64,000 bases of DNA from Oopsacas minuta (Eukaryota > Animalia > Porifera), in contig JAKMXF010000334.1 in the NCBI GenBank assembly GCA_024704765.1, forward strand, positions 62,001-126,000, in the 5' to 3' direction. The notes under the pieces are model-generated. The model saw nothing but the letters and a program-made list of their open reading frames with translations. It ran no database searches and had not been told where the DNA came from. Each line of letters opens with the position of its first letter. Position 1 is the stretch's first letter. The position numbers were made by a program, and so were the translations under genes. Shown piece after piece: positions 49,526 through 55,200 of this stretch.

Positions 49526-50476
49526 CTATTCGGTTGCTTCAATACATTTACTACTACCAACTTCTACTTGCTTTTTGAGTGTGGGCCTCATAGCTGGATA
49601 ATTGTGTGTTTCAATAAAAAACACGTATGTTAATGCACCAAGGGGTGCCCCGATCAAGGGTGCGATTACCGGTACCCAGAAATAATAATCGTGTACACGG
49701 AAAATCCCTGCCCCCCAAATACAAGCCGCGAAACATCTTGGAGGGAAGTCTCGAATTGGATTAGCGGCACCCCCACAGTTGTAAGAGAAACTAACCCCCA
49801 GTGAGAAGATAATCAAGCCAACCCCAATAGGACGTAGATACTCAATTAGACCAGTATTCGGCCTATCTACAACAGCTAAGATTAGGAATTGTAGGAGAAA
49901 TGCACTGAAAAACTGATCCCAAAAATGGTTCAGATTCGATACGTCCGGTTGAGGATTAGTAGTCCATATTCTGTAGGTTTCATTTACACCGTTGAACACG
50001 TGTATACCACCATCATAGTTGTTTAAGGCATCAAAATAGTAGAGATAGTTTACTAACGCAGCCATGAATGCGCCTAGGACTTGGGCAATACAATAGAAAG
50101 GAACCTTCCACCAAGGGAACTTGCCTACAAAGGCTAGCCCTAAGCTTATCGAAGGGTTCAAATGACCACCTGACACACCCATTGATACAAACAGGCCGAA
50201 TGTTATGCCGATTGCCGCGGCCCAGGCACCCCCGATCCAGTCCGTGATTGAGTTCCCAATAAAAAAGGCTTGAGCAGCTCCACCAATAGCATACGTAATG
50301 AAAATGAAAGTCCCGAAGAATTCAGCCAAATAATCATGTCCGATGAAATGTATTACTTTCTTCCAGGCCCATTCAAATAGCTTGCCAGGGTACCATAATA
50401 TTGATGGGAAGTTGTATGGGAATACAACGAAACGTTGAGGGCGATCCTCGTACTTGACACTTGGTAGAACTTCCAT
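49526..50476 (-). CDS. Aquaglyceroporin (GlpF/AQP3-7-9-10 clade), 316 aa, intronless
   Basis: LAEFFGTF, SGGHLNPS, AQVLGAF, long loop C, NPIRDFPPR (the Asp after the second motif is aquaglyceroporin-type), YFWVPVIAPLIGA. Confidence 0.95.
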   Translation of the reverse strand: MEVLPSVKYEDRPQRFVVFPYNFPSILWYPGKLFEWAWKKVIHFIGHDYLAEFFGTFIFITYAIGGAAQAFFIGNSITDWIGGAWAAAIGITFGLFVSMGVSGGHLNPSISLGLAFVGKFPWWKVPFYCIAQVLGAFMAALVNYLYYFDALNNYDGGIHVFNGVNETYRIWTTNPQPDVSNLNHFWDQFFSAFLLQFLILAVVDRPNTGLIEYLRPIGVGLIIFSLGVSFSYNCGGAANPIRDFPPRCFAACIWGAGIFRVHDYYFWVPVIAPLIGAPLGALTYVFFIETHNYPAMRPTLKKQVEVGSSKCIEATE

Positions 50477-51233
50477 CGATTAGAATGAAATGAATTAGTT
50501 ACTATTGTTATTTACCATTATTTATGGAATGATGTTATGCATACAAAATGCGACTTACATCAAACTTGCTGACTCACAGCATATATTGAAAGATATCTTT
50601 ATAATTTTTAAGTATTTATTAGGTGCAGCTCCTATAACGAGATGTCCTCAGTGGTAGTGGCGTATCCAGACTCGGACCTACCCGGGCGTCAGTCTTCCGC
50701 TATCCTGGCTCAGCTTACGAAATGTTATGCACAAATTTTCACACCTTTTTGTATATTATTCAAGATGATGCTAACGATACCGTTTCAACTGCGTGTCAGG
50801 GGTAATTTCGAGTATGTAGATTCCAATTTTGACATTTTCAAATATACATATCTACAATTCTACATGATTTATCATATGATCAAGCATATTTTCACACTTT
50901 TACAAATAATCATTTTGTATTGGGTAGAGAGTCAGAGACATAACCCAGAGGATCTAGCTGCATTCCCAGTCTGTCGGCTGGACATTTATTACTTTTATCA
51001 ATCTAGATTTTTAGTTGAACGAATCTTAGGTTTCTTAGTGAATATTACATCCCCCATCAAATCCTCCAAATCCTTAATATATTTTCCTTATTATTTTCGG
51101 TTATTAATCATTTCTAAACTCCTCTCGTAAAATACATGGTGATTGTTTAATAAATAATAATAAATATGAAGTGATAAGAAAGATACCAAAGAAAATACAA
51201 TCTATATAACAAATTGAGGAAATACATAAAATT

Positions 51234-51833
51234 CTACTTATTCTTGTCTACACCTCTAGAGAAGTATGTCTGACTTTTCACCGGGTCAGGAATAATAGTG
51301 TCTTTCCCAGGACTCCATTCAGCTGGACAAACTTCTCCAAACTTATCCGTGAACTGTATAGCTTTTACCAACCTCAATGTCTCGTCAATTGACCGTCCAA
51401 TCGCCATATCATTGATGGTTATTTGTCTTAGAATACCCTTTCCATCGATAATGAATAAGCCTCTCAAAGCAACACCATCTTCCGTTAACACTCCATAGTC
51501 ACGAGAAATGGACTTAGTTATGTCGGATAGTAATGGTATATTCATTGCACCTAGCCCGCCTTTATCACGTGGTTGTTTTGTCCATGCCAAATGGCTGAAT
51601 TCTGAATCTACTGAGCAAGCTACTAAATCACAGCCGATTGCATTGAATAGATCTGATTTCTCACTGAACGCGATTATCTCTGTCGGGCACACGAATGTAA
51701 AGTTGAGTGGGTAGAAAAATAGCACAAGAAATTTTCCTTTATAGTTCGCCAGTTTTATGGGTTTGAAACTTCCCTTCACTATTGCAGTACCGGAAAAATC
51801 TGGTGCGGGTTTGCCAACAAATGCATTTGACAT
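51234..51833 (-). CDS. PRDX: Typical 2-Cys peroxiredoxin (Prx1/AhpC class), 199 aa, intronless
   Basis: ATG at 51833 ([13 protein letters not shown]); [27 protein letters not shown]-terminal YF. Confidence 0.96.
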
Positions 51834-52233
51834 TTCTTTCGCGAAATCTAAAATGCTTCCTAATACAAGTGACAAGGATTATATATAGAACATACAGCCA
51901 ATTAATTTCAATGAATATTAAAGTTCTTAAATAATGAAACTCTTTTCTATCAATTTTGATCTCCTTGGCTCTATAAGCGGGGAGCGTCCGAGGCAGTTAT
52001 CCAACAGAATTCGTACTTCAAAAGCTACCATTAGAAAATAGGAAAGTTGTGAGTCCATTATTAAAAACATTTCGATCGCCAATTAATAAGTGTCAATAAA
52101 TACTGAAATTCAATGGTTCTTCTATAATATTTTGTATGTAACCAGAATTGTAGCCATACACTATAAATACATACAAACTAGCATTACTAATTAAGAGATT
52201 ATGAATATGAGTTTATGAATGTGAAATGAAATT

Positions 52234-55200
52234 CTAAGGTTTCTTTTCAGACAGCTGATAGAGGTGATTCTTAATCTGCTTCAAACTTGAAGTACCTACT
52301 CTAAACGGCATGTGTATTGTTGGCGGTACATCTGATATCTCTTCTTCCTGTCCTGTTGTAAAAATAGATTTATTTCAATAAACAGCGATCGCCAAAGGTT
52401 ACTTTCCGTGTGTCTATCTCACGGCTGTCTAGATCTCAACCGGACCAATATTTGGACTGCTAAGTGCTAATACAAATAGTATTAATGTACTGGACAAACT
52501 TTTGTGTGCTCATATTTTTTACAAGTCAATTTGACAAATTGAAATCTGCTTGCCACGACCTGGATACAAGTATTACCTACATTTATTTAATGCTCAATTA
52601 ACTGCAAGGCTAAACTGTTAACTATTAACAGCATTTTCACTTTCCAGTGTATGTATTTCAGGCTGTTATGCTTAGTTTTCTAACCAACCTAGTGTTTCGT
52701 TAAGATTTCCTAATGAAGGAGAATAGTGTTTTCTTAATTTTGAGAGTTTCATTCCTATATCAAATTCCGCTAAAAGAATATGAATATAATTGATGTGCAT
52801 TATTTAAAATATCTCTCAAGTCTTGACTAATTCTCAGGGTTGCCGTGGGAATGGAAATCCTATGGGAATTCCGATAGAGATCCTGTGGAATGGGATGGGA
52901 GTTGAAATTCCGTTCCCACTGCAACCCTCCTAATTCTTAACATCAGCGTTACACTTGGGACGTCTTCGATTAAGTTCTCATATAATTGTTCAATAGATAT
53001 TAGTACTTCCATTAATATGTACAAAGATATATATGTTAAGGATTATACATAGCTGTATGAAACGATCCGTAGGTCAGGTTTCAACCGGGTGTGAAATGCT
53101 AATACAAATAGTATTAGTCAAACGCTTTTGTATAGGTCAGCCTGGCCAATTGAGATCTGCTCGCTACGACCTTGTCATATGATCTACCCTATTTATTAAT
53201 AACATTAACGTACACTGTTTTCTGGTAGTTCTGAATAATGAGTTATCTAATTCAAAACTAAAGTCAGTCAGATCGTCTAAGCTGCCAGTACTATGTAGTG
53301 GTAAGGCAAAGAGAGACTCGGATGAAGGGCTAAAGAAATATAAGTAGAAATGGTTATAACACTACCTTGTAGGGTGTAGTTCGAAATATTCATCTATAGA
53401 TGCCAACCTGACTTCTCACCAACCCTTAAGATTCCTTCTAAAATCCGTGATAGCGGGATTTCTGTATTAAAAATTAAAAAGCAATAGACATTTCGCTTCG
53501 CGATGAACTCGGCGTAAATCATAATTTTTGAAGTTCATTTACCACACAAACAACAATAAATTTGTATTTGACGGACTTCTCTCGTGCGTAAATAAAAATC
53601 TCAGAGCTAGGAGAATTGCTTCTTCTGCATAATTATATAATGCTAGTTACACCCTTGATTTATCATGCGAATTCTGATTCAGGTTAGATGTTCTAGCTCA
53701 CACACCTACGGTAATAATTCTGGTCAATCTGAAGATTGGTCAGGTCACGTGTTCTTCCTTTATAAAGTACATAACTCGATAAAGAGTTGGCTTAATAATA
53801 TATATCCGGAATTTCACTGTAACTATTACCAAATATTTTGCTGAATATCATCGCCCTTGGTTTCTACTATCTCCAATTCATCATTTAGATTCAATGTCTT
53901 TAGTCCAGGAGAGAAATACACTATAACATATAGCTTGTCTGGATCTGTAGATAACTTAGTAGAATCCTCATATATATGGAATATTATTTGTGTGTTGTAA
54001 TTGAGTTCTGATATTTTGTCTAATTTTCTTCTTGCTTCTGCCCATTCTTTATCTGCTTCCTATGAATGTATTTAGTATAATTACAAGAGTTGCTTATTAC
54101 AATATGTGATGTCTAGCATTATAAGTTTATTTACAACTGTATAGCTAAGATGTTGAGATGTTTCGGGATGGAATATTCTCATCGCAAACTTTTCAAGGAT
54201 CGAATGCCATGGATTGTCAAATTTAAGACCGATCTTGAACTTTCCTTAACTTAACAATACTAGAATTTCCAGGCAAACTTCGGAAGAATATAATATCAAT
54301 CGTAACCACTCACTTGTAATCAACCCCAGATCAGTTTCTAGGGGTGCTTGACTTACACATATATTAACCAAACTAGAATTTATTAAATTTATTCAAAAAG
54401 ACTTACTTCCCATAGACCTCCATACTTGATAATATTGAATAGAGAATGTACATGAGACTCGCTAGTGAAGTAAAGTCGAGTTCTGACATGTCTCTTTGGA
54501 GATTCTACATCAGTTGAGAAACTAGAGAAGTGGAAATTTCGTGGTAACCAGACCGCTATATTTCGCACGACCGCGCGGGAACTTATGAATATGCTCAAAT
54601 TATAAATGATTATTAGTTAGAGAAATCAGTGATGAAGTACAGGCAGCCCTCGCCGGTCGCTGTTTCGATTATTCGCGGTGTTTGTTCCGAGTTATGTCAG
54701 TTTGGTTGAAAATTTTGCAATTTTTATATTTGGTATGCATTACTATGGCGAAAATGTATTTTTTCTCGATAAACAGCTTTGGACTTTTTATCTAAATCAA
54801 CACATCTACTGTTTTTGTTATATTTTGATCACGTGAAAACAGAAACTTTTCTTATTAAAAATAAGCAAGTTTTACTCTCTTATGCTCACACAAGTAATAT
54901 TTTTAACTTAGTGAATACCATTAACCTTTTAAAACTCATAATTATTGCTTTATTATACATTCTTATCATATTTAGTAACACCACAATTCTCATTGAATTA
55001 ATGTCTTACCGTTCGCGATTTTGCCATTCGCGACAATTCTCAGGAACGTAGCCCCCGCGAACGACAAGGGCTACCTGTATTACAAATTTACAACACACAC
55101 AAACCACCAATAATTCTTAATGCTACTAGATCAATTAGAATAATTAATTAATACCCACAAGACATCTACTTTGAACTCGAGACGAAAACATTCCCTAATT

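What the first reader, a model, noticed from the sequence alone, without database searches (positions are those of the whole stretch)
49526..50476. Aquaglyceroporin with an aromatic-free A-G-G-R selectivity filter: candidate silicic-acid channel
Seen: counting gaplessly from the two Asn-Pro motifs (N107, N239), the four ar/R positions are A87 / G227 / G236 / R242. Known: the equivalents are W48/G191/F200/R206 in E. coli GlpF and F63/G203/Y212/R218 in human AQP3. Both aromatic residues are replaced by tiny ones here. Plant Lsi1/NIP-III silicon channels use a similarly wide G-S-G-R filter, and aquaglyceroporins have been implicated in sponge silicon uptake. Inference: if the host is a siliceous sponge, this looks like a convergently widened pore for Si(OH)4 or another bulky metalloid. 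Caveat: W85 is nearby and may partly fill the space.
Basis: partly seen in the sequence, partly recalled or inferred. Interest (0 to 1): 0.82.

Follow-up and report, generated by a model that had tools for sequence, protein, structure and literature searches.

The report
Glass-sponge aquaglyceroporin, known silicon-channel candidate
This is an intact, apparently transcribed aquaglyceroporin gene of the glass sponge Oopsacas minuta whose pore filter does lack the usual aromatic residues, but this gene family has already been published as the sponge's candidate silicic-acid channel, so the finding is correct rather than new.

Summary
Window 49526-50476, on the minus strand, is an intronless 316-aa MIP channel. 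Alignment to E. coli GlpF and human AQP10 puts A87/G227/G236/R242 at the four ar/R positions.

W85 is not a displaced filter residue. That column is hydrophobic in all 138 other aquaglyceroporins sampled, and 41 of them also carry an aromatic at position 87.

The host is the siliceous glass sponge Oopsacas minuta: a paralog ORF in the same genome is 100% identical to a named O. minuta protein. The gene is one of only three MIP genes found there.

AGGR or a near variant is conserved in all 32 members of this gene's clade. In the sample, an all-small filter ending in Arg occurs only in hexactinellids. Filters with no aromatic residue are not specific to silicifiers: human AQP10 is G-G-I-R, and about 10% of sampled aquaglyceroporins from animals not known to silicify lack both aromatics.

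The silicic-acid reading is plausible. GlpF gains Ge transport when four filter residues, including both aromatics, are changed to the Lsi1 type, and AQP10 transports Si. It is untested for this protein.

It is also already published (Santini 2023; Maldonado 2020; Leria & Maldonado 2026). Verdict: real and ordinary for this lineage. First-stage notes of this scan also flagged the two paralogs on another contig.

The parts
49526..50476 (-). Complete intronless CDS (316 aa plus TAG) of a hexactinellid aquaglyceroporin (gAQP)
   Evidence: ORF list. Pfam MIP 2.1e-38. AQP10 5e-55. AF2 model pLDDT 87, Z 38 to AQP7. Start conserved with homologs. Covered by the RNA-like run X4 with no joints inside.
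50216..50218 (-). A87, TM2 position of the ar/R filter (GlpF W48, AQP10 G62, Lsi1 G88)
49796..49798 (-). G227, TM5 filter position (GlpF G191, AQP10 G202, Lsi1 S207)
49769..49774 (-). G235-G236. G236 is the loop-E filter position LE1 (GlpF F200, AQP10 I211, Lsi1 G216). G235 corresponds to Lsi1 G215.
   Evidence: Lsi1 residues from PMC8556265
49751..49753 (-). R242, LE2 arginine of the filter. The following D243 (49748-49750) is the aquaglyceroporin-type Asp.
50288..50290 (-). A63, TM1 'fifth' filter residue. It aligns with GlpF G25, which is Lsi1 T65 according to Saitoh 2021. It should be exposed when the TM2 residue is small.
   Evidence: position shown by alignment; exposure inferred
50150..50158 (-). 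First Asn-Pro motif, NPS instead of NPA
49754..49762 (-). Second Asn-Pro motif, NPI. This is the majority form in hexactinellid gAQPs (33 of 46 other rows; NPV in the TNAR clade, NPA in two) and is absent from 138 other aquaglyceroporin representatives.
50222..50224 (-). W85, a conserved hydrophobic TM2 residue two positions before the filter site. It is not a filter residue.
   Evidence: TM2 is an unbroken helix 79-102 with pLDDT above 90. The column is L/F/I/W/V in 138 of 138 other aquaglyceroporins and is aromatic together with an aromatic at 87 in 41 of them.

Best explanation
The ORF encodes one of the three aquaglyceroporin paralogs (gAQPs) of the hexactinellid glass sponge Oopsacas minuta. 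It folds as a standard six-helix MIP channel of the AQP3/7/9/10-GlpF type. The two aromatic side chains that normally form the hydrophobic corner of the ar/R constriction are replaced by Ala and Gly. Counting the TM1 position, the filter is A63/A87/G227/G236/R242. Inferred mechanism: with the aromatics gone, the constriction is wide and is lined by the loop-E backbone (G235-G236) and Arg242. It would then passively pass small, uncharged, tetrahedral or pyramidal hydroxylated solutes such as Si(OH)4, Ge(OH)4 and As(OH)3, down their gradients, probably at the expense of glycerol. In the animal it would be the passive influx limb of the published gAQP plus ArsB/Lsi2-like silicon route that feeds spicule formation. 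The likeness to plant Lsi1 (G-S-G-R) is convergent and not by descent. Shown here: gene, host, fold, filter residues, clade-wide conservation, probable transcription. Inferred: pore width, substrate range, physiological role.
For: Gene and family. Host: a paralog ORF is 100% identical to a named O. minuta protein. The assembly has 365 contigs and 61.46 Mb, matching Santini 2023. Filter mapping: to GlpF, to AQP10, and across 50 and about 150 relatives. W85 excluded as a filter residue. Conservation: hexactinellid gAQPs are monophyletic (100/99) with four clades, and this clade carries AGGR 20, GGGR 6, AAGR 2, AGGR-like with Cys 2, and two truncated AGGR rows counted within the 20. An all-small filter ending in Arg is found only in hexactinellids among the roughly 150 closest 50%-identity representatives. 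Transcription: run X4 covers ORFs but not the 48.2-49.3 kb spacer, and it alone shows a GT..AG joint in a neighbouring gene. Partner candidates: CitMHS/Lsi2-type loci exist in the genome. Literature: GlpF G25T/W48G/G191S/F200G gains Ge and As transport and loses glycerol transport; Lsi1 T65A keeps activity; the AQP10 filter is T/G/G/I/R and AQP10 is Si-permeable (PMC8556265; PMC4551902; PMC6232157). Three hexactinellid gAQPs rose under DSi enrichment, only one of them significantly (PMC7439455). Hexactinellid gAQP filters were compared with Lsi1 in PMC12978542. O. minuta 'aquaporin 9 genes' are listed for silicon transport in PMC10280926.
Against: I found no transport assay for this or any sponge gAQP; the sponge evidence is expression correlation in another species. 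It is unknown which paralog clade corresponds to the DSi-responsive 'AQP3/9' of Vazella. Lsi1's selectivity rests on two polar faces (T65, T181, S207), and this protein has Ala and Gly at the T65 and S207 positions, so the filter is wide but not Lsi1-like in chemistry. T65I or T65V hurts Lsi1. These three genes are the only MIP loci found in the genome, so they probably also carry water and other solutes. Aromatic-free filters occur in animals not known to silicify.
Confidence: 0.6

Rival explanations
1. It is a general-purpose solute and water channel. With no orthodox aquaporin in the genome, the three gAQPs share all MIP-type transport (water, urea, ammonia, glycerol, H2O2, metalloids). The wide filter reflects broad permeability as in vertebrate AQP10, and silicic acid is at most an incidental substrate.
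For: Only three MIP loci were found in 61 Mb, all gAQPs. The closest solved relative, AQP10, has a wide G-G-I-R filter and a glycerol and urea physiology. About 10% of related aquaglyceroporins from animals not known to silicify lack both aromatics. Maldonado 2020 argue that these channels keep roles for other metalloids.
Against: The all-small A/G-G/S-G-R filter was seen only in hexactinellids, which silicify heavily. The three paralog clades hold distinct, strictly conserved filters, which suggests division of labour and not one generalist design. The GlpF variant with Lsi1-type filter residues lost glycerol transport while gaining Ge.
Confidence: 0.3
2. It is a normal glycerol channel in which W85 (or W80) swings into the constriction and restores the aromatic corner, so that the gapless alignment misleads.
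For: W85 is conserved as W/F/Y in most hexactinellid gAQPs and sits near the filter in sequence.
Against: No alignment (HMMER, or MAFFT with 9, 20, 50 or about 150 sequences) places a gap between position 85 and the first Asn-Pro motif. The end points of the structural superpositions agree with the sequence register: AQP10 offset 25 at both ends, 250 residues aligned. TM2 is modelled as one regular helix with high confidence, so position i-2 faces away from position i. In 41 of 138 other aquaglyceroporins an aromatic at column 85 coexists with the canonical filter aromatic at column 87, 13 of them with Trp. Some clade members have Cys, Leu or Ile at 85.
Confidence: 0.04
3. It is a decaying or contaminant gene with no function in the sponge.
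For: It is intronless in a metazoan genome, and a dispersed repeat lies just upstream.
Against: The frame is intact and the length and start are conserved across dozens of orthologs with a conserved filter. Metazoan neighbours are present: PLOD, TRAF zinc-finger, NHL, PP2C, TMEM39, peroxiredoxin. The ORF is covered in the RNA-like run. Both paralogs are also intronless. The protein is in the public proteome.
Confidence: 0.01

Closest known systems
Hexactinellid aquaglyceroporins gAQP_Hex1-4 (Leria & Maldonado 2026, PMC12978542; Maldonado et al. 2020, PMC7439455; 'aquaporin 9 genes' of O. minuta in Santini et al. 2023, PMC10280926)
   Same: This is the same gene family, and almost certainly this very gene. 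Hexactinellid gAQPs form a monophyletic group with four clades, and Lyssacinosida have three genes, as found here. They are already proposed as passive dSi channels working with ArsB pumps, and their filters are already compared with Lsi1.
   Different: There is no difference in kind. I could not tell which published subclade name (Hex1 or Hex4 is most likely) applies, because the paper's sequence files and Table S14 are not held. The paper frames the filter by seven Lsi1 residues. The A-G-G-R description, the NPI hallmark and the tandem copies in other assemblies are details added here.
Human AQP10 (PDB 6f7h)
   Same: It is the best solved relative by sequence (5e-55, 39% identity; TM-score 0.92 normalised to the AQP10 chain). 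It has Gly at the TM2 and TM5 filter positions, no aromatic in the filter, and an unusually wide ar/R region. It transports Si in oocytes and HEK cells. The conserved His before the first Asn-Pro motif (H80/H105) is shared.
   Different: AQP10 has Ile at LE1 and Thr in TM1; this protein has Gly and Ala, so an even less obstructed filter is expected. AQP10 has NPA/NPA, against NPS/NPI here. The pH gating of AQP10 was not examined here.
Rice Lsi1 / OsNIP2;1 (PDB 7cjs, 7nl4), NIP-III silicon channels
   Same: It has small residues at TM2 and LE1, the Gly-Gly pair before the second Asn-Pro motif, and the Arg: G88/S207/G215-G216/R222 against A87/G227/G235-G236/R242. Some hexactinellid paralogs in other species are exactly G-S-G-R.
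   Different: It is not a NIP. phmmer gives only a partial match at 1.5e-8, against 5e-55 for AQP10, and Foldseek gives a query-normalised TM-score of 0.58. The polar residues T65 and S207 are Ala and Gly here. There are 129 residues between the two motifs, not 108. The aquaglyceroporin-type Asp follows the Arg. The resemblance is convergent.
E. coli GlpF and the engineered GlpF_SFLsi1 (G25T/W48G/G191S/F200G; Saitoh et al. 2021)
   Same: It is the same aquaglyceroporin scaffold (30-32% identity, Z 35.5). The engineered variant lacks both aromatics, as this natural protein does, and it gained Ge and As transport while losing glycerol transport.
   Different: Wild-type GlpF has W48 and F200 and does not transport Ge. 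The engineered variant carries Thr and Ser where this protein has Ala and Gly.

Membership tests
MIP / aquaporin superfamily (PF00230) | Profile match above the curated cut-off, and a six-TM fold with two re-entrant half helices | tested here: met
   132.8 bits against a cut-off of 25. AF2 model pTM 0.84, with helices as expected and half helices at 108-116 and 240-254. Z 33-38 to solved aquaglyceroporins.
MIP / aquaporin superfamily (PF00230) | Two Asn-Pro-Ala motifs | tested here: met
   N107-P108 and N239-P240 are invariant. The third residue is Ser and Ile instead of Ala, which are tolerated variants.
Aquaglyceroporin (GLP) subfamily | Closest relatives are AQP3/7/9/10 and GlpF; Asp after the filter Arg; Pro in TM6 (GlpF P236 position) | tested here: met
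   PDB ranking. R242-D243 and P269 are invariant in the alignments.
Aquaglyceroporin (GLP) subfamily | Aromatic 'hydrophobic corner' in the ar/R filter (GlpF W48 and F200). This is typical of the subfamily, not strictly defining. | tested here: not met
   A87 and G236 occupy these positions. Both aromatics are also absent in about 10% of sampled GLPs and in human AQP10.
Hexactinellid gAQP clade (Leria & Maldonado 2026) | Groups with hexactinellid sequences to the exclusion of other GLPs; three genes in a lyssacinosidan | tested here: met
   100/99 support for the hexactinellid group, which includes named O. minuta proteins. Three loci in the genome.
Hexactinellid gAQP clade (Leria & Maldonado 2026) | Assignment to a named subclade (Hex1, Hex3 or Hex4) | not testable with these tools
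   The paper's File S1 and Table S14 are not held. The tandem duplicates seen in other assemblies would fit Hex4, but that is a guess.
Plant NIP-III / Lsi1 silicon channels | Membership of the NIP lineage | tested here: not met
   NIP2-1 matches only residues 50-142 at 1.5e-8, against 5e-55 for AQP10. Query-normalised TM-score 0.58 against 0.74.
Plant NIP-III / Lsi1 silicon channels | G-S-G-R filter with polar T65 and T181 faces | tested here: not met
   The filter is A-G-G-R with A63 at the T65 position. The T181 equivalent was not determined.
Functional class: silicic-acid-permeable channel | Measured Si or Ge flux | not testable with these tools
   There are only analogies: AQP10 and GlpF_SFLsi1 transport Si or Ge, and Vazella gAQPs rise with DSi.

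The most novel reading that the evidence does not exclude
The three glass-sponge gAQP lineages carry three different, each tightly conserved, five-residue filters. This lineage has A-A/G-G-G-R. A second has A-G/A-S/G-G-R. A third has P-T-N-A-R, with the conserved His before the first Asn-Pro motif changed to Gln in 12 of 12 sequences. This may represent a substrate partition that the literature has not resolved. In it, this AGGR lineage, which is present as two or three copies on single contigs in other glass-sponge assemblies, would be the high-capacity Si(OH)4 pore. The NPI motif, seen only in hexactinellids in this sample, would contribute to that specialisation.
Probability: 0.2. Interest if true: 0.5.

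Novelty: already known. Interest (0 to 1): 0.25.

Why it matters
Sponges are the only animals that build silica skeletons. How silicic acid enters their cells bears on ocean silicon cycling and on the origin of biomineralisation. If this channel conducts Si(OH)4, it is a natural animal counterpart of the plant Lsi1 pore, built on an aquaglyceroporin scaffold. It would also be a ready test case for the rule that removing the two filter aromatics gives Si permeability. That idea is already in print for this gene family, and the O. minuta genome paper already counts 'aquaporin 9 genes' under silicon transport. What remains valuable is the missing experiment, not the sequence observation.

Tried and rejected
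1. A pore-radius (HOLE-type) measurement and a direct check of the W85 side-chain direction were not possible. The AF2 model's coordinates are not exposed to scripts. I relied on alignment register, helix continuity and column statistics instead.

2. No run on record as RNA holds the locus. I inferred that X4 is RNA-like from its coverage pattern and a GT..AG joint. Contigs cannot give expression level or strand.

3. The supplements of both Maldonado papers are not held. I therefore could not name the subclade or see their Table S14 filter table.

4. Pfam ArsB (PF02040) found nothing in the genome. The related CitMHS model (PF03600), to which I take Lsi2-type proteins to belong (my own knowledge, not checked here), found seven matches spread over five contigs. 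None is near this gene, and I did not classify them.

5. I considered horizontal transfer or a retrogene because the gene is intronless. I rejected this as a special explanation: both paralogs and the orthologs in other assemblies are also single ORFs, and the neighbours are ordinary metazoan genes.

6. I looked for demosponge gAQPs among the closest relatives to compare siliceous and non-siliceous sponges. None was among the 20 representatives whose names I looked up. For demosponges I rely on the published description.

No spliced model was needed.

Full report
THE OBJECT

The interval 49526-50476 holds a single open frame on the minus strand, not the plus strand. It has an ATG at 50474-50476, 316 codons and a TAG at 49526-49528. 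In-frame stops lie upstream, and the N-terminus is conserved with homologs from the first Met. Pfam calls it MIP (PF00230, 132.8 bits against a cut-off of 25). Against solved structures, the best sequence matches are the aquaglyceroporins: human AQP10 (5e-55), AQP3 (about 1e-43), AQP7, TbAQP2, PfAQP and GlpF (about 3e-28). Orthodox aquaporins and NIP2-1 score only 1e-5 to 1e-11. An AlphaFold2 model built on a 50-sequence alignment has mean pLDDT 87 and pTM 0.84, with the expected helices. It superposes on AQP7, AQP3, GlpF and AQP10 at Z 34-38 and rmsd 1.6-2.1 A over about 245-250 residues.

THE HOST

The window's genome has 61,460,524 bases in 365 contigs. One paralog ORF in it is 100% identical over 333 residues to 'Aquaporin-9-like [Oopsacas minuta]'. 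The other paralog carries an O. minuta accession. The genome paper describes 365 scaffolds, about 61 Mb and 36% G+C, which matches the window's composition. So the host is the hexactinellid glass sponge O. minuta, a silicifier. Neighbouring ORFs are ordinary metazoan genes: PLOD, TRAF zinc-finger, NHL, PP2C, TMEM39 and 1-Cys peroxiredoxin. The window's protein is itself in NCBI/UniRef.

THE FILTER

I fetched glpF from E. coli K-12 and aligned it. The result is A87=W48, G227=G191, G236=F200, R242=R206 and W85=V46. The TM1 'fifth' residue is A63=GlpF G25, which Saitoh et al. equate with Lsi1 T65. The HMMER alignment to hAQP10 has a constant offset of 25 and gives G62/G202/I211/R217. This is the filter Saitoh et al. 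name for AQP10. Their TM1 residue is printed as Thr35. In the alignment, the only Thr of that helix aligns with A63. I note this numbering mismatch and did not resolve it. In the 50-sequence alignment, AqpZ rows read F-H-T-R in the same columns, which is a positive control.

W85

- No alignment introduces a gap between position 85 and the first Asn-Pro motif.
- The end points of the structure superpositions agree with the sequence register.
- TM2 is modelled as one regular helix, 79-102, at pLDDT 93-97. A residue two positions away therefore points to a different face (inference).
- Among 138 non-hexactinellid aquaglyceroporin representatives, column 85 is always hydrophobic (L 51, F 33, I 16, W 14, V 14, and others). 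It is aromatic together with a canonical aromatic at column 87 in 41 cases, 13 of them with Trp.

W85 is thus an ordinary structural position and not a shifted filter residue. I could not measure the pore because the model coordinates are not exposed.

HOW SPECIAL IS A-G-G-R

The genome has only three MIP loci. They are this gene and a convergent pair on another contig, with filters A-G-L-R and T-N-A-R. A maximum-likelihood tree puts all hexactinellid sequences in one group (100/99) with four well-supported clades. O. minuta has one gene in three of them. This matches the published picture of four clades, with three genes in Lyssacinosida.

I tabulated 46 hexactinellid sequences besides the window's own; one of them, P0272, is the window protein's own database entry.
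- This gene's clade (32 rows including the window's own two; 69-86% identity for the others) reads AGGR in 20 rows, GGGR in 6, AAGR in 2 and AGCR in 2; two of the AGGR rows are truncated at the N-terminus.
- A second group reads GSGR, GGGR, ASGR or AGLR.
- A third clade is T-N-A-R in 12 of 12 rows, always with Pro at 63, Gln at 105 and NPV.

The filters are therefore under constraint, and they differ between paralogs. The second motif is NPI in 33 of the 46 rows, NPV in 12 (all in the T-N-A-R clade) and NPA in two. NPI occurs in none of 138 other representatives.

An exhaustive HMMER search of 1.84 billion cluster representatives, followed by tabulation, showed two things.
- A filter that is small at all three non-Arg positions and ends in Arg was seen only in hexactinellids. 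One pond-snail protein is G-G-S-K.
- Fourteen non-hexactinellid representatives, about 10% of the sample, lack an aromatic at both the TM2 and LE1 positions. The ones I could name come from gecko and kestrel (AQP10), prawn, pond snail, two tardigrades, millipede and a fluke.

Vertebrate AQP10 generally has Gly in TM2. So 'aromatic-free' is not diagnostic of silicification, while the extreme all-small version is so far lineage-specific. The nearest non-sponge relatives that I could name are AQP3- and AQP10-like proteins of hemichordates, an ascidian and a coelacanth, and aquaglyceroporins of freshwater snails.

EXPRESSION

No run on record as RNA holds the locus. Four runs of one sample do hold it. 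Three have flat depth across genes and spacers and so look like DNA. The fourth, X4, covers the ORFs (46.9-48.1 kb, this gene, the peroxiredoxin) at hundreds-fold word depth. It drops to 0-10 across the 48.2-49.3 kb spacer. It alone shows a 336-bp skip with CT..AC ends, which is GT..AG on the minus strand, in a neighbouring gene. I read X4 as RNA-derived and the gene as transcribed without introns. This is an inference from contigs, not a measurement. No run shows a difference in any filter codon. The two variants seen fall at K302 and V306.

FUNCTION

What is shown is a channel fold with small residues where the hydrophobic corner normally sits. What follows from published experiments:
- Wild-type GlpF, PfAQP and AqpM do not carry Ge. 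GlpF with G25T/W48G/G191S/F200G gains Ge and As transport and loses glycerol transport.
- Lsi1 T65A/G/S keep activity, whereas T65V/I lose it.
- hAQP10, with a wide filter lacking aromatics, carries Si in oocytes and HEK cells.
- In the glass sponge Vazella, three gAQPs rose on DSi enrichment, only one of them significantly.

On this basis the most likely mechanism is passive conduction of Si(OH)4 and similar metalloid hydroxides through a widened constriction lined by the G235-G236 backbone and R242. This would supply the silicon route that ends in ArsB/Lsi2-type exporters. CitMHS-type loci, the Pfam family in which I place Lsi2, exist elsewhere in the genome.

Against a dedicated role:
- These are the only MIPs the genome has.
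- Lsi1's polar T65/S207 chemistry is not reproduced, since Ala and Gly sit there.
- I found no flux measurement for any sponge gAQP.

I put Si permeability at about 0.6 and a mainly generalist role at about 0.3.

NOVELTY

The O. minuta genome paper already lists its 'aquaporin 9 genes' with ArsB under silicon transport. Maldonado et al. 2020 proposed the gAQP plus ArsB route. Leria & Maldonado 2026 analysed 46 hexactinellid gAQP hits, defined the four clades, and compared their filters residue by residue with rice Lsi1. They reported that all hexactinellid clades keep at least three of seven Lsi1 filter residues.

- the classical four- and five-position description (A63/A87/G227/G236/R242);
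- the exclusion of W85 as a filter residue;
- NPI as the majority second motif of hexactinellid gAQPs, unseen outside them in this sample;
- the contrast between paralog filters;
- tandem copies of this clade in other glass-sponge assemblies;
- the frequency of aromatic-free filters in animals not known to silicify.

First-stage notes of this scan had also flagged the paralog pair on the other contig. I confirmed that pair and its filters here.

Noticed in passing
G000 contig C309, 394802-395701 (+) and 396148-397065 (-); locus L002 149-1150 (+) and 1411-2424 (-): The two other MIP genes of the genome lie tail to tail about 450 bp apart. Both are intronless. One is A-G-L-R with NPA/NPI. The other is T-N-A-R with NPA/NPV and has Gln in place of the near-universal His before the first Asn-Pro motif (the AQP10 pH-sensor position). 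That Gln, with Pro63, is fixed in 12 of 12 orthologs.
   Followed up: partly
whole genome G000: Only three MIP-family loci were found in 61 Mb, all aquaglyceroporins, with no orthodox aquaporin. The genome paper speaks of four 'aquaporin 9' genes, while the six-frame searches here find three.
   Followed up: partly
window 50730-50900, upstream of the gene's start: A roughly 140-165 bp repeat unit with at least 80 matches across the genome. Some form head-to-tail arrays, for example on contig C350 at 113934-114638. DNA-run depth rises 3-6 fold here. The 162-aa ORF at 50642-51130 (+) has no Pfam match and overlaps this repeat.
   Followed up: partly
window 51234-51875 (-): An intronless 1-Cys peroxiredoxin (AhpC-TSA plus 1-cysPrx_C) lies directly upstream of the channel gene on the same strand. 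It is also covered by the RNA-like run.
   Followed up: no
window 52351-52688: The RNA-like run X4 skips 336 bp with CT..AC ends, which is GT..AG on the minus strand. This is a spliced intron of a minus-strand gene next to the peroxiredoxin.
   Followed up: no
L005 2783-3736 and 6001-6954 (ENA ERZ25069837, contig of 903,909 bp): Another glass-sponge assembly carries two near-identical AGGR copies of this gene about 2.3 kb apart. A third cluster member lies on the same contig. Several other assemblies also have two or three members per contig, whereas O. minuta has one. An NHL gene follows, as in the window.
   Followed up: partly
protein P0013 (UniRef, labelled 'Salmonella sp. s51228'): A 235-aa 'aquaporin' filed under a Salmonella taxon sits inside the hexactinellid gAQP group in the tree, next to P0011 (99/100), with an -SGR filter and NSA/NPI motifs. 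It is almost certainly a mislabelled sponge sequence.
   Followed up: partly
protein P0142 (Lymnaea stagnalis, CAL1539801.1): A pond-snail aquaglyceroporin with a G-G-S-K filter. It has Lys in place of the otherwise near-invariant filter Arg.
   Followed up: no
window 49560 and 49571: Two single-base differences (A>G, C>G) appear in two DNA-like runs of the same sample, falling in codons V306 and K302 of the C-terminal tail. They are probably allelic, as the specimens were non-clonal.
   Followed up: no
residues 1-46 of the protein (window 50339-50476): An N-terminal extension with the motif RPxxF..FP....W.PGK..EW.WKK is shared by all hexactinellid gAQP clades and absent from other aquaglyceroporins. 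It is modelled at low to medium confidence as a hairpin plus a helix before TM1. It may be what a topology predictor called a seventh TM helix in the 2026 paper.
   Followed up: no
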